A stretch of 64,000 nt of DNA from Botryllus schlosseri (lineage: Eukaryota). The stretch's first letter is position 1; every line of letters begins with the position of its first letter. The stretch lies in contig CM119371.1 of NCBI GenBank assembly GCA_051294905.1, positions 15,376,001 through 15,440,000 on the forward strand, written 5' to 3'. Below the pieces are notes generated by a model. That model saw only the letters and a list, made by a program, of their open reading frames with translations. It searched no databases and was not told the origin of the DNA. Positions 5,538 through 41,969 of this stretch are shown here, one piece after another. Made by a program: the position numbers and the translations under genes.

Positions 5538-7145
5538 ATGGAGGTTGTTTACAAAACATCTAAAACTCACCGCGGCTCCCTGTTGTCAAAATTGAAAGCC
5601 AACGGGAAGTTTTCCGACGTCACAATACGATGCGGACCCGTCGAAGTTATGGCGCATAAATGCGTGCTGACCGCATCGACGCCATATTTTAGAGGGATGT
5701 TCTTGAACGACACTTACGAAGCCAACACCGGAATTCTTGACTTCTCTTCCGCAATGACTCCTGAGGTGATGAGACAATGCGTCAACTTCATTTATATGGG
5801 AACCGCGTGGATCTCTGCCCCAATAGCAACAGGACTGATTGATGCCGCGGAAATGTTGCAGTTGCCGGAACTGTCTAAATTATGCATCGAATTTCTAGCC
5901 GAAAACATAAATCTGACAACGTTTCCGGAAGTGATCTCTTTGTCACGTCTCTATAATAAGAATTCTTTAAATGAGCCGATACTGCGCTTTCTTGATGACA
6001 ATCTAAAAATGCTTGTGAAGTCTAACCGTATCAAGTCGCTCGATTATGAAACGTTGGGTTATTGTTACGATTTGTTGCAACGAGCGACTCAATCGCACGA
6101 GCTCTGGAAATGGTACGGGCTGTTGAATTGGACGCACGCCAATCTCGAAGAAAGAAAGTCCAAGCTTCCTGAACTGTTTCGAACTACAGCGCATTCCAGC
6201 GGACGTAGTTAAAAAGCTTATTTGTCCAGAGAATCTGATTGATGGATCGCTGAAATGCCTACAACATATCCGCAGTTTTGTCGCGCGCAAGCAAGCTCGC
6301 ACTGAAAACGGAACACCGGCGATGAGACGCATCACGTCGATTAATAAAGCTACGAAAGTAGTTTACCAATACGATTTGTACAATGAGCTGTGGCAAAAAG
6401 TAGACGTGATGCCATCAACTGTTGGTCTACATTGTCAAGCAGTTGAATATCGCGGGATATTATATGTTGGCGACAGTTCATCCTTATACGCCTTCAATGG
6501 GACGAAGTTGACCCGTCTGGCAGTAACGTCGGGAGGCCACAGCCATGATAGGCCACAGTACAGTCAGATTATTGGCGTGGCACAGCGGATGGTCGTATTG
6601 GTCACAATTCATTGCACTTTGCTAGTGGATATCGAGTCTCGCGAGTTGCAAAAGGTGCATCACCAAAATATGAGACTTACGGATGGATTTGCGGTGCATG
6701 CAATGAAAATTCGGTGTATGTTATGGGTGGAAAGAAAGGATATAATGATGCGAATGAACGCAATACTGTATCTAGATTGATATTGCGTAAAATGAAGTAT
6801 TTGGATTCACCGCCGATGATCAGGGCCAGGGCGTACGGTGCAGGCTTTTGGTACAAGAATATTCTGTACGCTCTCGGAGGTGTTACTAGTACGGTCGAAT
6901 TCCTCAACAAAGAGACCAGACAGTGGCAGATTTTGAAAAATTTAGAAATGCAATGTAGGAATGTCAAAGTGCATCTTGCCGACAAGTTGTATATTTTTGG
7001 TGGCGTGTTGGGGACTGACGTTAAAACTGTTGATCTACATCAGCTGGATATCCCCGCGAAAGAGCTACAACCCTCAAGACGTAGTGCTGGCGACATGGAG
7101 GCGTGTTGCGCGTCGTATACCAAGTATATCAAACTTTCCAAATGA
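5538..7145 (+). pseudogene. Intronless BTB-BACK-Kelch (KLHL-like) gene, frameshifted
   Basis: BTB (FSDVTIRCG..AHKCVLTASTPYFRGMF), BACK (WYGLLNWTHANLEERK) and Kelch repeats (VYVMGG, ILYALGG, LYIFGG) are split over ORFs 5538-6212, 6322-6780 and 6612-7145 in different frames. At least 2 frameshifts (~6185 and ~6540-6610); assembly indels not excluded. Confidence 0.85.
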
Positions 7146-23500: not shown

Positions 23501-23943
23501 CTCGAAAATACTTTATAACTATGTTGGTTTACGAAATACTTTTTGAGTCGCCTTCGAACTCGCTCTCCACCCTACTGGGAAATTTGGGGTGCGGCAATTA
23601 TGGCCATGGCAAGAATGCAAATGGTTGGGCGCGATAAATTGACCTCTATAAAAATGGGCAATAGACACATTATGACGTAACAAGCAAATTACGCATCTTT
23701 TTAAAGGGAGTGTTATCTCATTAAGCCTTTTCAGCGCAATCCATACATTGTCTTCCAGCATAGCTTCTAAGATGTAAAATAAATGTAATCGTGAGTAATC
23801 GTGATTACTTTTCCAATGTAATCGTAATCGTAATCGACTACTTCCTGATTTTGCTATAATCGTAATCGTAATCGTAATCGCGTCATTCGGAAGTAATCGT
23901 AATCGCAATCGATTACATTCATGAAGTAATCACCCCATGTCTG
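20538..23943. mobile_element. hAT-type non-autonomous element with subterminal GTAATC repeats
   Basis: TIR CAGACATGGGG...CCCCATGTCTG. 8-bp TSD GTACTCAC at 20530-20537 and 23944-23951. (GTAATC)n arrays near both ends. Confidence 0.88.
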
Positions 23944-24150: not shown

Positions 24151-24347
24151 CCGAGCGAAATGGTGTAATGGTTGTGCGTCCTGTTTCCCGATCGGTAGGT
24201 CGTGGGTTCGATCCCCGGCCGGGTCAGACCAAAGACTCGAAAACTGGTATCCGCGGCTATCCTGCTAGGCGCTCAGCAATCACGGATAGCATGGAGGAGA
24301 AAAAAATCGGGGTGCAGACTAGATGACCTTACTATAAAGACCGTATC
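24151..24347 (+). mobile_element. tRNA-derived SINE, 5' part (split by the Polinton; 3' part ~39027-39097)
   Basis: Pol III A box (TGGTGTAATGG) and B box (GGTTCGATCC), followed by GGGTCAGACCAAAGACTCGAAAACTGGTATCC...CCTGCTAGGCGCTCAGCA, which resembles the Meta-SINE core as I recall it. Continues after the right TSD into a (CT)n tail. Confidence 0.7.
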
Positions 24348-24604
24348 AGTAGTAGACTTAGCTGGCTTTATTGCCCGCCAATCCCAGAAGGCCACGTCTC
24401 CTTAATTTCCTCGCCTACATTGCCCCATCATCCGCCCATTGCCGCACCTATAGCACACCTATTGTCACATCATTCACCCATTGCTGCACCTATAGCACAC
24501 CTATTGCCACATCATCCGCCCATTGCCGCACCTATATGACGCCCATTGCCACATCATCTACGCCACATCATCAAGCGCCACGCCTATAGTGCCACATCAT
24601 CCAT
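24348..24604 (+). repeat. Left TIR of the Polinton
   Basis: AGTAGT terminus; internal tandem GCCACATCATC / GCACCTATAGCACACCTATTG subrepeats matching the reverse complement of 38817-39020. Confidence 0.9.
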
Positions 24605-24838
24605 CCACAATATCATGATTATGCGTACTGAGCTGTTTTTGAGAATATGAATTCCCCTGTAATACACTAAACGTTGAACTAGATTTCATAACGTCATCAC
24701 AGAGGAATCAGCCAACGATATTGATCTAGGTTTTAGGTTTGAAGCCTGTAGTCACCGCATTTCATACGATTCAGCGCTTTTCATGTCTCCTAACACTTTA
24801 CTCAGTCTCATTGAAATAGCATTGCATAGTGTATCAGT

Positions 24839-25406
24839 TCATTTATTTCGAAAAAAGAGCATATCAATGATATCGTTGAACGTTATTGCGTCGATTCGCG
24901 TGCTGAAATCCTCCGGATCGGTTGATGTTTCGAGGTAATCCGCTTTGATGCCATCCGACGCTGCGATCCGAGTTCTTGCGTTCGATCTGACCGTTTTGTT
25001 TGATGTAGCGATCACTGGCTTGTAGTATAAACGATACGAGTGGAAGGTCGGGATTAGGAACAACTACGCTGGGCGAATAGATGACGAATTCGTCAGCCGA
25101 ATTCAGAGGTTGATAATGCTCGATCCCGTCGCGAGTATACGTAACGACCAAACCTCCTTCATGCTTCAGAGTGGCTCGATATTTCTGAATGATCCCGCTT
25201 GTGGCATGTACAAAGAGTTGATCCGAGGTCAATTCTGCTCCATTCGAAGCTTCGATACGTAATTTTGTGATGTCATTAAAAAGATACAAGTCTTTTCTAT
25301 AGGGCCCCTGGGCCAGAATAGTATCTCCACGGATTGCTAGACTCATTCTTTGAAAAGAAATATCAAACATAAGTACAACAGTCATCACGCAATTCCACCT
25401 CGCCAT
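24839..25406 (-). pseudogene. Unknown accessory ORF A, possibly secreted, probably one frameshift
   Basis: Hydrophobic N-terminus MARWNCVMTVVLMFDISF. Comparison with the paralogue at 26441-27000 shows third-position changes in the frame ending EDFSTRIDAITFNDIIDMLFFRNK (ORF 24839-25063), so that frame is the likely true C-terminus. Confidence 0.5.
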
Positions 25407-25944
25407 CAAATTTAGTCGAGCCTCTTCTTATATTAGGTGTCGCATAACAGACATTACGAATATATTGCAACCCCTTCCGCTTGATGAGAAAAGGACACGC
25501 AGGATAAAACTTTGCATGCTCGAGCCAGGGATCATCGCACGGCAACCAATTTTGAAACAACCCTCCGCATGAGAAACACTTTAAATGATCCTTATAGCCC
25601 AAATAGAACAATCCGCAGTCTGCGAGCTCTGTTCCGGAGGTATTGATATTATCCGGCCACCGCATGAATGTGCTTAGTCTACGAGCATAGCGTGTCATGT
25701 TATAGAAAACGGGATCATTCAATGGGGAAACAGTTACATCTCTATGCTTCGCATAGCATTCATAAATCTTTTCCCCTCTGTTATTTATCATAGCTTGGTA
25801 CTGTTCAATGGGACCCATCCGAGTTTCATCTTCGCCTATTCCTATGCTACTTGTGTTACCGATGCAAGCGCAGTTGAATGTAGCGTAATTTGTAGGGTCC
25901 ACACTACGCTTAGGTAGCGAATCGCTTTGATCAATGTTCGACAT
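25363..25944 (-). CDS. Inhibitor of apoptosis (IAP), single BIR domain, no RING, 193 aa, intronless
   Basis: RLSTFMRWP..LADCGLFYLGYKDHLKCFSCGGLFQNWLPCDDPWLEHAKFYPACPFL is a complete BIR signature with Zn ligands C-X2-C-X16-H-X6-C. The GGL..W...DDPW.EH groove is of type II (IBM-binding) BIRs. Confidence 0.93.
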   Translation of the reverse strand: MSNIDQSDSLPKRSVDPTNYATFNCACIGNTSSIGIGEDETRMGPIEQYQAMINNRGEKIYECYAKHRDVTVSPLNDPVFYNMTRYARRLSTFMRWPDNINTSGTELADCGLFYLGYKDHLKCFSCGGLFQNWLPCDDPWLEHAKFYPACPFLIKRKGLQYIRNVCYATPNIRRGSTKFDGEVELRDDCCTYV

Positions 25945-26440
25945 TGCTATCCGAATTGATATACTCTCATGATCAGTATGCTTTATACCGATATTGAGCT
26001 ATGCACCGTTGAAATATGTGCTTGGTACCGATCGAATGATAGGCCCCCTAGGTCGTATCACGGAAAATTAGAACGTCGACTGCTCACAGAAAAAAGCCAC
26101 GTAGCTCATATCCGTTCCTGGTACGTGTTATCAATAATTAGAATGTTAGTAAGAATGCCACGAGTACAATCACGCGGTGATGATTAATACCTAAAAAATG
26201 ACATCTTGACTCATGCATTTATTTTAAAAAATTAAACTATAGTGTATCGGAACTTAGTTTTACTTTACTGAGATTAGTTTTACTTTTCAACTAACTTGTC
26301 TGTCGATACATTCATTTAATTACGATCCCGAGAAGTCGGATCGATTCCCATAATATAACGATTCAGTGCCGACCTTATGTCTTATACTTCAGCTGACACT
26401 TACTCAGTCTCATTGAAATAGCATTGTATAGTGTACGAGC

Positions 26441-34923: not shown

Positions 34924-37410
34924 ATCTAGCAAGAACCAGGAATTTGTATTGAGTGACTTCGCTCCTACAGCAAACGCAGCTTACATTACGGCGGTACTGA
35001 ACATCGAGTAATAAGCGGGACTAGGCAGGCTACCGTTAATACGAATTTGCATTTTGCTGCTACAATCTATGCTATAGTTGAGCGACTTTGATACGACCTC
35101 GGCACACTTCTTTGATATAGCTGCGCAGAGATGTAGCCTTGAACGCTTGCGTCTGGGACAGATGTGATGTCAGTGATCTGAAATGTTATAGCCCGCAGTG
35201 GCATAGCGTTTTAGGAGATAAATTATAGCATAGACATAGGTTTAGCTATAGATTTAATTCACTGTCGGAAAAGCATCAGTGCACTAGCTATTAAAATCAC
35301 ATATCTAAAAGCAGCAGCTTATGGACTTGTAAAATCGGCATAATGCAAATCACATATCCAAAAGCAGCAGCTTATGGACTAGTGGCTTCATATTATCATC
35401 ATCTAGCAAGAGCCAGGAATTTGTATTGAGTGACTTCGTTCCTATAGCCCCGATTGAGTGACTTCGCTCCTACAGCAAACGCAGCTTACATTACGGCGGT
35501 ACTGAACATCGAGTAATAAGCGGGACTAGGCAGGCTACCCTTAATACGAATTTGCATTTTGCTGCTACAATCTATGCTATAGTTGAGCGACTTTGGTACG
35601 ACCTCGGCACACTTCTTTGATATAGCTGCGCAGAGATGTAGCCTTGAACGCTAGCGTCTGGGACAGATGTGATGTCAGTGATCTGAAATGTTATAGCCCG
35701 CAGTGGCATAGCGTTTTAGGAGATAAATTATAGCATAGACATAGGTTTAGCTATAGATTTAATTCACTGTCGGAAAAGCATCAGTGCACTAGCTATTAAA
35801 ATCACATATCTAAAAGCAGCAGCTTATGGACTTGTAAAATCAGCATAATGCAAATCACATATCTAAAAGCAGCAGCTTATGGACTAGTGGCTTCATATTA
35901 TCATCATCTAGCAAGAGCCAGGAATTTGTATTGAGTGACTTCATTCCTATAGCCCCGGCAAACGCCCCGCTCCTCCTTATGCTATCGTGATCAATTATGA
36001 CGAAGCTCGAAAAATCGGAAGTCACTGGATATGCATTTACGCGGATGAGGATGAGACACATTTTCACGATAGCTTTGGCTTAATGCCGCTGAAATACGAG
36101 ATTGCCTGCTTTATAGAACCAGAAAATTATACCTGCTCCATAAAGCGTCTGCAGCACAAACGTTCCAGAGCTTGCGGTCGTCATTGTCTAAGCTTCATCG
36201 TCCATAAGGCGCGCGGATGGAGTACGGAACGTTATTTAAATTCCTTTGGCGAAGATCACCGCAAGAATGATTCGATCGTACGACGCTTCGTCAAGGAGCT
36301 GAAGCAAGAAAATGAAATTGTATAAATGTATATGCGAATAAAATCAATAGTTTCAAAGTTTGCTTAGTACGTTTAAGGGTGATATTCGCTACGTTCATTA
36401 TAGCAATCATCTCAAAGTAGTAGACTCTAAATCAGCAGTAGCGACTTGCTTTCGGTTAGGTGATAGTGGCTACATATTACCATCATCTAGCAAGAAACAG
36501 GAATTTGTATTGAGTGACTTCGCTCCTACAGCAAACGCAACTTACATTACGGCGTTACTGTACATCGAGTAATAAGCGGGACTAGGCAGGCTACCCTTAA
36601 TACGAATTTGCATTTTGCTGGTACAATCTATGCTATAGTTGAGCGACTTTGATACGACCTCGGCACACTTCTTTGATATAGCTGCGCAAAGATGTAGCCT
36701 TGAACGCTAGCGTCTGGGACAGATGTGATGTCAGTGATCTGAAATGTTATAGCCCGCAGTGGCATAGCGTTTTAGGAGATAAATTATAGCATAGACATAT
36801 GTTTAGCTATAGATTTAATTCACTGTCGGAAAAGCATCAGTGCACTAGCTATTAAAATCACATATCTAAAAGCAGCAGCTTATGGACTTGTAAAATCGGC
36901 ATAATGCAAATCACATATCTAAAAGCAGCAGCTTATGGACTAGTGGCTTCATATTATCATCATCTAGCAAGAGCCAGGAATTTGTATTGAGTGACTTCGT
37001 TCCTATAGCCCTGGCAAACGCAGCTTACATTAATACGGCGTTACTGAACATCGAGTAATAAGCGAAGCTAGCCAGGCTACACTTAATACGAATTTGCATT
37101 TTGCGGGCACAATCTATGCTATAGTTGAGCGAGTTGAAATGATACGACCTCGGCACACTTCTTCGATATAGATATAGCTGCGCAAAGATGTAGCCTTGAA
37201 CGCTAGCGTCTGGAACAGATGTGATGTCAGTGATCTGAAATGTTATAGCTTCAACCCGCAGTGGCATAGCGTTTTAAAATGGGAGATAAATTATAGCATA
37301 GACATAGGTTTAGCTATAGATTTAATTCACTATCGGAAAAGCATCAGTGCACTAGCTATTAAAATCACATATCCAAAAGCAGCAGCTTATGGACTTGTAA
37401 AATCGGCAAA
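34924..37410. repeat. Array of four ~480-bp tandem units inside the Polinton
   Basis: The anchor ATCTAGCAAGA..CAGGAATTTGTATTGAGTGACTT recurs at 34924, 35401, 35906, 36485 and 36962. More diverged copies at ~37500-37980. Confidence 0.9.
35958..36325 (+). pseudogene. 5'-truncated duplicate of the adenain protease
   Basis: Copy of ~34398-34763 offset by 1562 bp. Retains His/Asp/Cys but lacks the N-terminal ~30 codons; a few substitutions (ACGRHC, STERY, GEDHRKNDS). Confidence 0.88.
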
Positions 37411-38816
37411 ATCTCAGTAGTTAGATGCTTGCTACAACTCGCAATTTATCAACTTTAGGTCGTGAGTAAAGCAAGAATTCATAGACTAACATCCATCTCA
37501 AATCCGAAGTGCATACCCGCGTAATTATAACCAAATTTAGTGCGAATCTATACGGAAATGTAGCCTAACTCACCTGCGTCATTAGGTGAAGTGCATAGCG
37601 CGATAGTTGTGATAAATGCGAAATTTTCCGAGCGTAAATTGCGTATATGCGATGTCGGCGTTTTGATCTGAAATGAAATGAGCGAATTTAAATATAGGTG
37701 ATAAACTATTGCTCTAGCTAATTATTATAACCACACCGAGATTCGAGTAATAAGCGAGCCTAGATAGTCTACCTTTAACAGAAAACTTGCGTATACATTC
37801 GAATTTGTGCGACTTCGGCTATATTGCCGGTTAACATTATAGCCGCGCGCAGGACTCACCATTACGTTAGCTATTGGAGAAATCTCAACGTAAATCAATC
37901 TGCGTTCACAATTCGCGTAAGCTAATGCTGCATCGAGAAATTATAGCTAAATTGAGTTTAAATTGACACGAAAATACATTGGTCTTACCTCGTCTGCGAT
38001 ACCTGCATCCCTGCGCACATGGCAATACTTGTAATAGAAATGTGAAGTTTTCAGAATGCGAATTGCTTTACGTCGGAACTAAACATTCTAATTCGTAACG
38101 CCAGCGCGGCGTTTTCTTGGAAACGCAACTATATTTAGAATGTTCTAATTCCCATTATCGATGTGGCCCGACTTTTTGGAATCGCAACTATATTTAGAAT
38201 GTTCTAATTCATATTGTCGATGTGACCCGACTTCTTTGAATCGTAAGCAACTATATTCGTGCCGCATTTACACGCGTCAATTTCTTGGAATAGTATTCGG
38301 CAATATGCGCGGTGCATGAGCTTTGCGTGATCGTAGGCGTTTATGGTTGTGATATCTGTATTATCAAGTTGCATTTGCAGAATTCCCCAAAATCATTGAC
38401 TAATTAATGATGACACAGTGTTATAGTACACACTAACATAGTCTTACATTTATGTGTAATAACTCGAAAAAGGTGTTGTCTCGGAATTTAAGAGAGAATC
38501 GGTGGTTATATTCTCAAAACAGCTCAATACGGCTAGTTTGCTCAATAGCCTGGTGGTGAGCGACGTGAAATTATGGTCATCCAAACTAGGTTCGATTCTA
38601 GCTAAGGTAAGTTTTGACGGGGCAATGAGTGTCATGGGTGCAGCAATCGACATCGCGCTGGTTGATGCGGCACTGTGCGTCATATAGATGCGGCAATCAA
38701 TGCGGTGATTTCGAGTCAATGGATGATGTGGCACTGTGCAGCAATCGACATCGCGCTGGTTGATGCGGCGCTGTGCGTCATATAGATGCTGCAATCAATA
38801 CGGTGATGATGTGGCA

Positions 38817-39020
38817 ATGGATGATGTGGCACTATAGGCGTGGCGCTTGATGATGTGGCGCAGATGACGTAGCAGATGATGTGGCAATAGGCTGATGATG
38901 TGGCAATAGGTGTGCTATAGGTGCGGCAATGGGTGGATGATGTGGCAATGTAGGCGTGGCAATTAAGGCGATGTGGCCTTCTGTGATTGCCGGGCAATAA
39001 AGCCAGCTAAGTCTACTACT
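38817..39020 (-). repeat. Right TIR of the Polinton
   Basis: Ends CGGGCAATAAAGCCAGCTAAGTCTACTACT; GATGATGTGGC subrepeats continue inward to ~38620. Confidence 0.9.
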
Positions 39021-41969
39021 CGTATCGCATCTCCGTCGTCAAAGCATCTCGATGTGTAGGCGAAAATGAATACCATATCTCTCTCTCTCTCTCTCTCCAT
39101 TCGGCAGTGACATAAACGTTGCATCACGCGCCTAAATTATAACGGCATTATCAGTAAGTTACTTATCAATTTGAACGTGGATAGCGAAACGTTGTTTGTA
39201 TTTTGGATGTGCAATTAGAATATCACTTCCAAGGCAGTTCATTTCTCGGCGTAGATCAGGAATAAAATGTGTATTGGAATACTACATTGCGTCCCCTTGT
39301 CTGCTATTCTCTTGATCACCCAACGTATAGTGAAATCCAAGATAATGACCCAGTCAACAAAAGTGTGTACATTCAATGCCGAAACAGGCGAAGAAAGTGC
39401 AGGAGAGAAGTGAACGCAACTGTTTTGACACTACAGTGAGGCGGTACCTTTGATGTACAAAAACTGATCGCTCTCGAATTCAAAAGATCGATTGTTCTCC
39501 TTTCCATCGGTCGGCCAGCGAGATTGGTGTCAGCGTAATTAACCAATCAAATTGCGCTTGATTATCACGCGGCTTCACCGTGACGTTTCTTCTGCGTGGC
39601 TTTTCCAGGTTCGTGAGCACTTGAGCGTGTAATGATTGTGATGTCATAAGTCATCGGATGTTGTTTACCGCTACACACTTGAAGTTTGAATTATCGTCCG
39701 TACAGGCGAATTGTATTTCCGAGACTGTAGCGATGGAGGGGAAGTGAAGTTCTTTGTTGAGATAAGTGGAGCAAGGGATAGTTCGGGTTATTTTTGAGAT
39801 TTTTTACATGCTTGCTTAGATGTGTATTGGTAGTCAAAAGGTGTTTCGAATAGCAGATCAGTCGTATTAATTGCTTGTTTGCGTTAGGCTTGTAAAATAG
39901 TACTTGATATAAATGCTGACTTTGATTTTTCCGTGGCCTGAAGTGTCAGGTTGGCGGCAGTGAACAGCGTGATACTTGTCAAGTGCTTTGACCGTTATGC
40001 GTACTACCGACTTGTTGATATATATTTCAATGCTAAACCGCGGAAAAGTGTCGTTACCGCGCGCCGAATCTTGACGTGTTGTGGTTATGGCTTTAACATC
40101 ATTTGTTAGTGCATTCATTTATGTAGGCTAGGTATATTAACGAAACATGGGATATGCTCAACCATATACGTTCTCTGACTGCATTATCTGTGACTGAATT
40201 TACAATCGTTACAACGGTTGCCATTTCAACTGTTCAGCCAAATACTATATCTTGTGATAATTTCTAATTAAAATTTGTGACACTCATTTCAGTTAATCTG
40301 CGAGTTATTTTATTGCAATATTTAGCCTTTATTTCACGATGGAGACCGAAGCCATGAAGTGACTGCGATATGGCCAAATATCCGTATACGTCTGATGGTG
40401 AATTGAAAGAAATGCAGCGTTGGCGAAGGCAACAGTTCATAAAATATCGTTCTCCAAGCATTGGTTCAGCCTGCAGCGACTATGTCCTTGATCAGCCGAT
40501 TATCACTACTAAGGATATCTCGCTTTCTGTACATCGATGAATATGAGGCCAGTGGAATTACCCAGATATCAGTGACCAAGCCAAGCCTAAACGTGGGTTT
40601 TATCATTCACAATTGGGTTCTGAATGAAGTTAGCGTCCCACACAGTGAGCTGGCTGCTGATGGTAGCTCGGCGTTGCGTTGACCCTATTCTTCCCGCCAG
40701 ACTTGTTTGATAAACCAGATTTTGTCTGCATTTCAATTCAATAACAAGAATAGTTGTATCAAACTTGTCCCCGGAAAGAACATCTCTCTGTATTTCAACT
40801 GAAATCAATGTGTCGTTTTATGCATTTTATATGACTGTCTGTCTGTATTTGACCGGTATTTTGAATGTATGCTCGTGGTGGATTTTATTAAAACTAACAC
40901 GATAATGAAAATATATTTAATTGTCAATTGTGATGTCTTGCAACATACGGTTAATATATCTGCCAGAAAGCAACAATGATTCAGGTAGCCATAGGGTTAC
41001 TAGCGGTCGTAAGCTGCAGTAGCGAGAGGGTTAATGAACGGCAACTGAAGGGTTAATGAGTGTGCAGCTGAAGTGCGAAAATTGTATCTTTTGAAGCATC
41101 ATTTTGACATCGAATGCGGAAAATACGCCTGGCGATCGCTTCCCATTTTGTTGACTGGGGAAGCGCGCGATGTCGGGTAGCCTATAGGCTACATCGAATT
41201 CGCGAGGGATATTTGTCGCTGGCGCTACAGCAACTTATACTTGAGGATTTTGTAACGGGATCCAAGCCCCTAACCCTGGCTACGGCACTGTCCTGACCTC
41301 TCAAATACATGCTTATGCTGCCACGAGAATAATTATTCTGGTCGTTAAAAAATTGACCAACAATATCGATATAATTATGTACAAAATTAGAAAAAATGTC
41401 AAAGAGCCATATCTTACAACCAAAAGATCCATACATGGCTCGCGAGCCATAGGCTCCCGAACAGTGGTCTAGGGTCTAATATAGGGTTCATGGCTATTCT
41501 GACGAAAAAGGTTCCCAAACCCAGGTTTACAGTGTTCAGTATCACATGGCGTTGTAACGCAATAACAGGGGCGTTACACATCCGCATCCAGCCCGTCAGA
41601 CCATTCCATCCGGCCCGCGAGGCCATTCTGAGTGAATTGAAAAATAATAATCTCATCACCTGGCAGATTTTTAACAGAAGCTGAGATTTTAGTACTGAAT
41701 ACTTCGACGTAAATAAATAAATAATTTTACTATTCCGTTGTTTGCGAATAACGTTGTTTCTCGAATAGAGTCCCGAGCCCACATATTCCGTAGCATGATA
41801 AATAATTCTATTATGTATTATTATGCATAGCAACTAATAAACCATTCCAGTGAAAAGCAAAGACATGGATTTCAACGTAACATATTGAAATTTATTTGAC
41901 TGGTTCGGCCAGCGAGCGACCAAAACTATTGAATCCAACCCGTAGCCGAAGTTGAGTTTGACAACCATG

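What the first reader, a model, noticed from the sequence alone, without database searches (positions are those of the whole stretch)
24348..39020. Complete-ended Polinton/adintovirus with full virion module and integrase but no DNA polymerase
Seen: both TIRs and the TSD are present, so nothing is lost to the window edge. All morphogenesis genes and the integrase are identifiable, yet no pPolB ORF or PolB motifs (DxxSLYP, KxxxNSxYG, YxDTDS) were found by eye. The largest unassigned spaces (24610-27500, 34800-38700) hold small cargo genes and repeats. Established: pPolB is a defining Polinton gene and AGTAGT ends serve protein-primed slide-back replication. Inference: either a helper-dependent satellite lineage that swapped polymerase for host-manipulation cargo, or a post-insertion deletion.
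Basis: partly seen in the sequence, partly recalled or inferred. Interest (0 to 1): 0.85.

Follow-up and report, generated by a model that had tools for sequence, protein, structure and literature searches.

The report
Polymerase-deleted adintovirus copy with stub
This is an integrated copy of an animal virus-like transposon (adintovirus/Polinton) that lost about 95% of its DNA polymerase gene by deletion, keeps a short tail of that gene, and is itself decaying; a second, independent contig suggests, on thin evidence, that the polymerase-less form went on multiplying for a while.

Summary
The element at 24348-39020 is real. It has 137-nt terminal inverted repeats, AGT-reiterated ends and a 6-bp target-site duplication.

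It carries BIR/IAP and Bcl-2 cargo, an A32-type packaging ATPase, an rve-chromodomain integrase and a virion block. The order of the block from the ATPase to the protease matches an 11.7-kb relative (L001) that has a 1300-aa protein-primed polymerase just upstream of the ATPase.

The window has no polymerase gene, but it is not polymerase-free. The last ~76 codons survive as a stub (28344-28565) next to the ATPase.

The copy is also decayed. Integrase and major capsid gene each carry one frameshift and one stop. Bcl-2 and IAP are known adintovirus accessory genes.

An independent metagenome contig (L004, 97% identical) shares the deletion. Between the two copies the ATPase shows dN/dS of about 0.25. 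The stub carries far more lesions per codon than the other genes. This gives moderate support (about 50%) for a polymerase-less form that kept propagating before this copy died.

The copy is a new member of a known kind, of moderate interest.

The parts
24342..24347 (.). Left copy of the 6-bp target-site duplication (CGTATC)
   Evidence: Read directly from the sequence. It is identical to 39021-39026.
24348..24484 (+). Left terminal inverted repeat. The terminus begins AGTAGTAG. The arm contains 42-bp tandem repeats that run on to about 24607.
   Evidence: The arms differ at 13 of 137 positions, and the first 30 nt are identical.
24867..25427 (-). Open frame of 187 codons with no recognised domain (accessory gene of unknown function, or the 3' part of the BIR gene)
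   Evidence: There is no Pfam hit. Its 3' end region is duplicated at 26400-26524 and recurs in L005.
25366..25998 (-). BIR-domain (IAP-like) accessory gene; the open ATG frame is 193 aa
   Evidence: Pfam BIR, E 1.7e-18. PDB cIAP/XIAP/NAIP BIR domains, E 1e-21 to 1e-39.
26725..27009 (-). Small conserved ORF (about 92-95 aa) of unknown function, part of the cassette shared with L005
   Evidence: L005 has a 95-aa ORF at the homologous place, at 80% nt identity. There is no Pfam hit.
27518..28171 (+). Bcl-2-family accessory gene, 217 aa, intronless and open
   Evidence: - Pfam Bcl-2, E 1.4e-20.
- PDB Mcl-1/Bcl2L10/A1, E about 1e-10.
- The best named relative is Styela clava bcl-2-like 2 at 48% identity, an intron-bearing host gene.
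- pN/pS is below 1 against the sister copies L005 and L006.
28344..28565 (+). [quoted passage not shown] It is broken by two frameshifting indels and one stop.
   Evidence: - tblastn with the PolB of L001 and L002 gives 54-58% identity.
- PolB profile hits: E 1.5e-12 and E 5.4e-10 with a profile built without the close relatives.
- Lesion counts come from a nucleotide alignment to L003.
28572..29189 (+). Packaging ATPase (A32/FtsK-HerA type), 205 aa, open
   Evidence: Pfam Pox_A32, E 8.3e-9. Relatives at 97%, 90%, 66% and 62% identity.
29225..29524 (+). Small basic ORF (99 aa) at the position of the 115-aa gene of L001
   Evidence: The evidence is synteny; only a short C-terminal similarity to the L001 protein was found.
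29626..29964 (+). ORF of 112 aa, homologue of the 161-aa gene of L001 (N-terminal 52 aa at 46% identity)
29961..30946 (+). Retrovirus-like integrase (rve core plus C-terminal chromodomain), broken by one frameshift and one in-frame stop
   Evidence: Pfam rve E 1.8e-13 and Chromo E 3.7e-9 on separate frames. It is 61-65% identical to the 331-aa integrase of L001 over residues 1-329.
30903..31112 (+). Small ORF, homologue of the 72-aa gene of L001
   Evidence: 62% identity over 47 aa.
31142..31917 (+). First of two paralogous genes of about 250 aa (candidate vertex/penton protein). It may carry one frameshift, on weak evidence.
   Evidence: tblastn to the 282-aa protein of L001, E 5e-31. The paralogy is shown. 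No fold evidence was obtained.
31914..32636 (+). Second paralogue (240 aa, open), candidate vertex/penton protein
   Evidence: tblastn to the 255-aa protein of L001, E 1.4e-34. The AlphaFold model was poor, pLDDT 39.
32614..32985 (+). ORF of 123 aa with a basic C-terminus, homologue of the 126-aa gene of L001
   Evidence: 63% identity over 110 aa.
33035..34308 (+). Candidate major capsid protein gene (homologue of the 430-aa gene of L001), broken by one frameshift and one in-frame stop
   Evidence: tblastn covers residues 6-429 at 45-52% identity. The assignment is by synteny and size only, with no Pfam, PDB or fold support.
34308..34763 (+). Maturation cysteine protease (adenain/clan CE type), 151 aa, open
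   Evidence: 50% identical to the 150-aa gene of L001. A profile gives a marginal hit to the ASFV S273R protease, E 0.01.
34401..37420 (+). Recent tandem duplications (97-99% identity). A unit of about 1.56 kb, holding the 3' three-quarters of the protease gene and repeats of about 505 bp, is duplicated. This gives a second, partial protease copy at 35963-36322.
37421..38883 (.). Non-coding right arm with 59-bp and 98-bp tandem repeats
   Evidence: no Pfam hit in any ORF.
38884..39020 (-). Right terminal inverted repeat
39021..39026 (.). Right copy of the 6-bp target-site duplication (CGTATC)

Best explanation
The element is an integrated copy of an adintovirus-type Polinton/Maverick of a marine invertebrate; ascidian and echinoderm are the candidate hosts.

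Its ancestor had the usual layout: TIR, accessory genes (IAP, Bcl-2), protein-primed PolB, packaging ATPase, integrase, virion genes, protease, TIR. One deletion removed everything from the end of the Bcl-2 cassette to about 76 codons before the PolB stop. That is at least 3.7 kb of PolB plus some upstream sequence. A stub was left next to the ATPase.

Most likely (inferred, not shown) the deletion happened before this copy was integrated. The polymerase-less genome kept its own integrase, capsid, packaging and anti-apoptotic genes under selection for a time, so it must have been copied by a polymerase supplied by a full-length relative. This copy was then inserted by an rve integrase (6-bp duplication). 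It has since begun to decay, and its integrase and capsid genes are broken.

The shown part is deletion derivative, stub, decay and shared junction. I hold it at about 0.9. The clause that the deletion came first and the element propagated in trans I hold at about 0.5, and that is the figure given as confidence.
For: Shown:
- TIR and TSD are present.
- Gene order from the ATPase to the protease matches L001, where a 1300-aa gene precedes the ATPase.
- That gene is a PolB. Its homologues, at E about 1e-238, carry PF03175.
- Only the last ~76 codons survive in the window.
- Against the closest PolB-bearing relative (L003), the stub has pS 0.66 and pN 0.08, like the ATPase (0.78 and 0.06). It therefore comes from a gene that was functional until recently.
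- Homology to L003 starts, and homology to L005 stops, within about 10 nt of each other.
- An independently assembled contig, L004, has the same junction at 98% identity, which rules out misassembly.
- Bcl-2 and IAP are published adintovirus accessory genes (PMC8502044).

For deletion before death and propagation in trans:
- The ATPase of the window against L004 has 7 synonymous and 7 nonsynonymous changes, dS 0.058 and dN 0.014, P 0.013.
- In the window lineage the stub gained 8 derived substitutions in 222 nt. The ATPase gained 4 in 615 nt (P 0.004).
- The stub has 3 independent lesions in 76 codons. The other genes have 4 (perhaps 6) in about 2400 codons (P 0.001-0.002).
- Bcl-2 shows pN below pS against L005 and L006.
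Against: - Only one sister sequence with the deletion was found. It is 1.1 kb long and has no flanks, so distinct insertion sites are not shown.
- L004 could be the same locus from another individual or a close species.
- The TIR arms differ by 9%, more than the 3-5% between the two copies. If the arms were identical at integration, integration would predate the split.
- The non-coding spacer beside the stub differs at only 2 of 191 positions, so rates are uneven and the stub could be a local hot spot.
- The selection tests rest on 14 and 12 substitutions.
- No full-length partner with the same TIR was found.
Confidence: 0.5

Rival explanations
1. One-off decay. A full-length adintovirus was integrated, died in the germ line and later lost PolB through an ordinary genomic deletion. 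L004 is the same locus, as an allele, an orthologue or a segmental duplicate. No polymerase-less lineage ever multiplied.
For: - Fragmented and deleted Maverick copies are commonplace (PMC8504770).
- This copy is decayed, with integrase and capsid genes broken.
- TIR arm divergence (9%) exceeds the divergence between the window and L004.
- No second insertion site was found.
- The spacer next to the stub is nearly identical in the two copies.
Against: - In a dead copy all parts should evolve alike. Instead, the ATPase has dN/dS of about 0.25 between the two deletion-bearing copies (P 0.013).
- The stub has about 20 times more disabling lesions per codon than the other genes (P about 0.001).
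- The stub has about 5 times more derived substitutions than the ATPase in the window lineage (P 0.004).
- If the 9% arm divergence were all post-integration time, about 14 new stops would be expected in the other genes. Two are seen.
Confidence: 0.38
2. An ancestrally polymerase-less lineage, like a Polinton-like virus or a virophage, that replicates with another enzyme or always depended on a helper and never carried PolB.
For: No polymerase ORF is present. The virion genes and the integrase are present.
Against: - A PolB stub sits exactly where relatives have the PolB 3' end. Its substitution pattern is that of a recently functional gene.
- Relatives at 62-90% ATPase identity all have PolB.
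- No alternative replicase domain was found in any ORF of 45-60 aa or more in the unassigned regions.
Confidence: 0.03
3. Assembly artefact: the polymerase was lost by a collapse or mis-join in this assembly.
For: The right arm holds 97-99% identical tandem repeats that could trouble an assembler.
Against: An independent metagenome assembly (L004, ENA ERZ928222) has the same Bcl-2 tail, spacer, stub and ATPase junction.
Confidence: 0.02

Closest known systems
Adintoviruses / Polinton-Maverick elements with PF03175-type PolB ('Alpha' class of Starrett et al. 2021, PMC8502044)
   Same: - TIRs and a 6-bp TSD.
- An rve integrase with chromodomain, an A32/FtsK-type ATPase and an adenain-type protease.
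- A capsid block whose gene order matches a polymerase-bearing relative.
- Bcl-2 and IAP accessory genes.

   Different: The defining polymerase gene is reduced to a ~76-codon stub. The integrase and capsid genes are broken. The Alpha assignment is indirect: it rests on the relatives' PolB, whose homologues carry PF03175. L001's own PolB gave no Pfam hit.
Internally deleted (non-autonomous) derivatives of DNA transposons, and fragmented Maverick copies
   Same: Both ends and the TSD are kept, an internal gene is lost, and a remnant of the lost gene remains. Deleted Maverick copies are common (PMC8504770).
   Different: Here nearly everything except the polymerase is kept, including a whole virion module. 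There is statistical evidence of selection after the loss. Amplification to several loci, the hallmark of a non-autonomous family, is not shown.
Polinton-like viruses and virophages (helper-dependent small dsDNA viruses; PMC5499653, PMC4028283)
   Same: Same class of virion module (capsid genes, packaging ATPase and cysteine protease). Many members lack a PolB of their own. They may depend on another replicon.
   Different: Those lineages lack PolB ancestrally or carry another replicase (abstract of PMC5499653). This element lost PolB recently by deletion, keeps an rve integrase and shows no other replicase.

Membership tests
Polinton/Maverick - adintovirus | Terminal inverted repeats with a 6-bp target-site duplication | tested here: met
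   137-nt TIR at 91% complementarity. CGTATC lies on both sides.
Polinton/Maverick - adintovirus | [quoted passage not shown] | tested here: not met
   Only a C-terminal stub of ~76 codons remains. The PolB profile found nothing else in the 64-kb window.
Polinton/Maverick - adintovirus | Retrovirus-like (rve) integrase | tested here: met
   rve E 1.8e-13 and Chromo E 3.7e-9. It is 61-65% identical to the L001 integrase. The gene is present but broken by one frameshift and one stop.
Polinton/Maverick - adintovirus | FtsK/HerA-A32 type packaging ATPase | tested here: met
   Pox_A32, E 8.3e-9, above the Pfam cut-off; open 205-aa ORF.
Polinton/Maverick - adintovirus | Adenain-like maturation protease | tested here: inconclusive
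   No Pfam hit. A three-sequence profile gives E 0.01 to the ASFV S273R cysteine protease. It is 50% identical to the gene at the same position in L001.
Polinton/Maverick - adintovirus | Double jelly-roll major capsid protein and single jelly-roll penton | tested here: inconclusive
   Clear homologues of the 430-, 282- and 255-aa genes of L001 are present. There are no Pfam or PDB profile hits. The AlphaFold models have pLDDT 39 and 28, so no fold search was run.
Non-autonomous (helper-dependent) derivative family | Several copies with the same internal deletion at different genomic sites, each with its own TSD | not testable with these tools
   Only one further sequence with the junction was found (L004, 1.1 kb, no flanks). 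Exact TIR and junction patterns are absent from IMG/VR and JGI metagenomes. The host genome outside the window is not available.
Non-autonomous (helper-dependent) derivative family | Retained genes under purifying selection after the loss | tested here: met
   ATPase dN/dS is about 0.25 between the two deletion-bearing copies (P 0.013). Lesion and substitution densities are higher in the stub than in the other genes (P 0.001-0.004). The samples are small.
Non-autonomous (helper-dependent) derivative family | A full-length partner with matching termini in the same host | not testable with these tools
   The closest PolB-bearing relative found (L003) is 76% identical in DNA and is a 2-kb contig without ends.
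Polinton-like viruses | Ancestral absence of PolB and rve integrase, often with another replicase (primase-helicase type) | tested here: not met
   A PolB stub and an rve integrase are present. No other replicase domain was found.

The most novel reading that the evidence does not exclude
A long-lived, helper-dependent adintovirus lineage. It is a polymerase-less genome that keeps its own capsid, packaging ATPase, integrase and anti-apoptotic genes under selection and relies on the polymerase of a full-length relative. That would make it a satellite of an animal Polinton-type virus, of which this window holds one integrated, recently decayed copy.
Probability: 0.4. Interest if true: 0.7.

Novelty: new member of a known kind. 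Interest (0 to 1): 0.4.

Why it matters
Polintons/adintoviruses are defined by their own polymerase. Whether they spawn helper-dependent derivatives, as other virus and transposon families do, is poorly documented.

This copy shows cleanly how such a derivative arises: one deletion that spares both ends and every other gene. It also offers a testable hint that the derivative stayed under selection afterwards.

It is a further, well-delimited example of an adintovirus carrying host-derived Bcl-2 and IAP genes.

If only the deletion is real and the selection signal is noise, this is an ordinary decayed endogenous element.

Tried and rejected
- **Direct domain searches on the relative's large protein.** Pfam on the 1300-aa protein of L001 gave no hit, and PDB phmmer gave nothing. 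Its identity as PolB came only from its homologues.
- **Stop counts from tblastn.** I first counted 3 in-frame stops in the stub, and 2 stops shared with L004, from a single-frame tblastn reading. I inferred a long neutral history from 66% amino-acid identity. A nucleotide alignment to L003 showed these figures were partly out-of-frame artefacts. I withdrew that argument and replaced the counts.
- **Bcl-2 search.** The word-indexed protein search with Bcl-2 found nothing. The exhaustive search was needed.
- **Window proteins in the assembly index.** Exact look-up of the window's own ATPase and Bcl-2 proteins found no record.
- **Exact TIR and junction patterns.** IMG/VR and JGI metagenomes gave 0 hits. 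An ATPase-based locus search in IMG/VR found no relative.
- **Structure prediction.** Models of a penton-like ORF and of a capsid piece were too poor for a fold search.
- **PDB profile searches.** Capsid and penton profiles gave no hits.
- **Contig L009.** This relative was uninformative: bacterial-type neighbours and no large PolB ORF.
- **'Cargo replaced the polymerase'.** I considered this and set it aside, because L005 carries the same cassette and continues past the junction.


Full report
**1. The observation**

The window holds an inverted repeat pair at 24348-24484 and 38884-39020, 137 nt long and 91% complementary. The first 28 nt occur exactly twice in the window, in opposite orientation, against none expected by chance. 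Both ends start AGTAGTAG, and the six bases outside each end are CGTATC. The element, its ends and its 6-bp target-site duplication are therefore real and lie wholly inside the window. No part of the element is repeated elsewhere in the window.

**2. Gene content**

Pfam finds these domains:
- a BIR domain at 25366-25998 on the minus strand, E 1.7e-18;
- a Bcl-2 domain at 27491-28168, E 1.4e-20;
- a Pox_A32 packaging ATPase at 28572-29186, E 8.3e-9;
- an rve integrase core at 30051-30812, E 1.8e-13;
- a chromodomain in another frame at 30674-30946, E 3.7e-9.

The BIR ORF matches cIAP/XIAP/NAIP BIR domains in the PDB. The Bcl-2 ORF matches pro-survival members such as Mcl-1, Bcl2L10 and A1. The remaining large ORFs have no Pfam hit.

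Their identity comes from a relative. ATPase homologues were found at 97, 90, 66 and 62% identity. The 62% relative lies on an 11.7-kb contig, L001. Its called genes, in order, are of 75 (cut by the contig end), 138, 1300, 219 (ATPase), 115, 161, 331 (rve plus Chromo), 72, 282, 255, 126, 430, 150 and 90 (cut by the contig end) aa. tblastn of these proteins on the window shows the same order from the ATPase to the 150-aa gene.

The last gene of the block is a cysteine protease. A small profile gives E 0.01 to the ASFV S273R protease. The 430-aa gene and the two paralogous ~250-aa genes are the candidates for major capsid and vertex proteins. I could not confirm them: PDB profile searches found nothing and the AlphaFold models were unusable (pLDDT 39 and 28).

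**3. The polymerase**

In L001 a 1300-aa gene lies directly upstream of the ATPase. L002 and L003 (ATPase 66% and 90% identical) likewise have a long ORF ending just before the ATPase. The 1300-aa protein has no direct Pfam or PDB hit. Its homologues, at E about 1e-238 and 35% identity over 99% of its length, carry PF03175 (DNA_pol_B_2), and one is named a DNA polymerase.

In the window, only residues 1225-1300 of this protein find a match, at 28344-28565, immediately before the ATPase. I tested this with two profiles:
- A profile of 41 such polymerases, run without filters on all 2851 six-frame pieces of the whole window, hits only that place. It matches the last positions of the model at E 1.5e-12.
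- A profile built without the close relatives gives E 5.4e-10 for the window piece, 1.1e-22 for the L004 stub and 2.8e-82 for the L003 tail.

About 95% of the gene is therefore gone and a stub remains. No other replicase domain was found in the ORFs of the unassigned regions.

**4. What kind of loss**

Homology to the polymerase-bearing relative L003 begins at the stub. Homology to L005, a 4-kb contig with the same ORF95/Bcl-2 cassette at 80-88% identity, ends there, and L005 then continues with about 870 nt that are absent from the window. L005 thus represents the undeleted left side and L003 the undeleted right side of a simple deletion.

Against L003, the stub has pS 0.66 and pN 0.08, like the ATPase (0.78 and 0.06). 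It therefore derives from a gene that was under purifying selection until shortly before the present.

An independently assembled contig, L004, is 97% identical to window 28153-29251 and has the same junction. It is 1104 bp long and comes from an aquaculture-system metagenome (PRJEB22134; PMC9710629). This excludes misassembly.

**5. State of the copy**

Counted against L001:
- integrase: one frameshift and one in-frame stop;
- capsid candidate: one frameshift and one in-frame stop;
- first ~250-aa paralogue and the small basic gene: possibly one further frameshift each, on weak evidence;
- ATPase, second paralogue, 123-aa gene, protease, Bcl-2 and BIR: ORFs open.

Against L003, the stub has two frameshifting indels and one stop. 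These are three separate events. The L004 stub has none.

The right arm holds tandem duplications at 97-99% identity that include a second, partial protease copy.

**6. Cargo**

Starrett et al. report Bcl2 and IAP homologues in adintoviruses and place accessory ('Oncoid') genes typically upstream of PolB (PMC8502044). The cargo here is of the known kind and in the expected place.

The closest named Bcl-2 relative is Styela clava bcl-2-like protein 2, at 48% identity. It is a gene of 1.7 kb lying between host XPG and NUDIX genes, so it has introns, whereas the element's copy has none. This fits capture from a host. It makes a marine invertebrate host likely but does not identify it.

Bcl-2 shows fewer nonsynonymous than synonymous changes against the diverged copies L005 and L006 (P 0.012 and 1.5e-4).

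**7. Did the polymerase-less form multiply?**

For:
- Between the window and L004, which share the deletion, the ATPase has 7 synonymous and 7 nonsynonymous differences. This gives dS 0.058 and dN 0.014, P 0.013.
- Using L003 as outgroup, the window lineage gained 8 substitutions in the 222-nt stub but 4 in the 615-nt ATPase (P 0.004).
- The stub has 3 lesions in 76 codons. The other genes have 4 to 6 in about 2400 codons (P 0.001-0.002).

These results say that the other genes stayed under selection after the polymerase was lost. That implies copying by a polymerase supplied in trans.

Against:
- The numbers are small.
- There is one sister contig only, and it has no flanks.
- The spacer beside the stub differs at only 2 of 191 positions, so rates are uneven.
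- The TIR arms differ at 13 of 137 positions, only 3 of them at CpG sites, which is more than the two copies differ.
- That arm divergence cannot be pure post-integration time either. It would predict about 14 new stops in the other genes, against 2 seen (using my own rough figure of 4% nonsense among random substitutions). The arm clock is therefore unreliable.

I put propagation after loss at about 0.5, one-off decay at about 0.4, and other readings at a few per cent.

**8. Comparison and novelty**

The element meets the Polinton/adintovirus criteria for ends, TSD, integrase and ATPase. It fails the polymerase criterion through a secondary deletion. The capsid and protease criteria are inconclusive here.

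It is not a Polinton-like virus, because it has an rve integrase, a PolB stub and no other replicase. Deleted Maverick copies are common (PMC8504770), and the cargo types are published. I therefore file it as a new member of a known kind. The helper-dependent lineage is the most novel reading not excluded.

Noticed in passing
window 5538-7145 (+): Three adjacent ORFs carry BTB, BACK and Kelch domains. They look like an intronless KLHL-type gene split over frames, possibly a processed pseudogene or a retrocopy.
   Followed up: partly
window 24419-24607 and 38804-38950: Both TIR arms contain arrays of a 42-bp unit, with 14-21-bp sub-repeats built around ATTGCCACATCATC. These may be protein-binding sites. 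The first 30 nt of the two arms are identical, while the rest differs by about 9%.
   Followed up: partly
window 27150-27460 versus 35064-37842: A segment between the minus-strand accessory genes and Bcl-2 is an inverted copy of part of the ~505-bp unit that is repeated five times in the right arm (pairs I3, I10-I14, I20, I22, I23). It could be a shared promoter or regulatory module.
   Followed up: no
window 24798-24918 and 26400-26524; L005 3694-3773: A piece of about 120 nt, covering the 3' end of the 187-codon ORF and the sequence downstream of it, is duplicated 1.6 kb away. It recurs in L005.
   Followed up: partly
L005 389-557 and 3849-4016: In this relative the ORF95/Bcl-2 cassette is repeated in tandem with a period of about 3.45 kb at 82% identity. 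Its Bcl-2 is split into two ORFs.
   Followed up: partly
window 23779-23933: Just upstream of the element, host DNA holds a GTAATCG-rich imperfect palindrome with arms of 32-45 nt at 71-72% complementarity (I6, I13).
   Followed up: no
L009 (ENA ERZ25039605 contig, 18.9 kb): An ATPase relative (50% identity) with a weak rve hit downstream lies beside genes with TaqI_C, PLDc_2, Helicase_C and Cullin hits. Only small ORFs lie upstream of the ATPase, where PolB would be expected.
   Followed up: no
window 28172-28343: The non-coding spacer between Bcl-2 and the stub differs from L004 at only 2 of 191 positions. The neighbouring stub and the ATPase synonymous sites differ by about 5.5%. This may reflect a constrained regulatory region.
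   Followed up: partly
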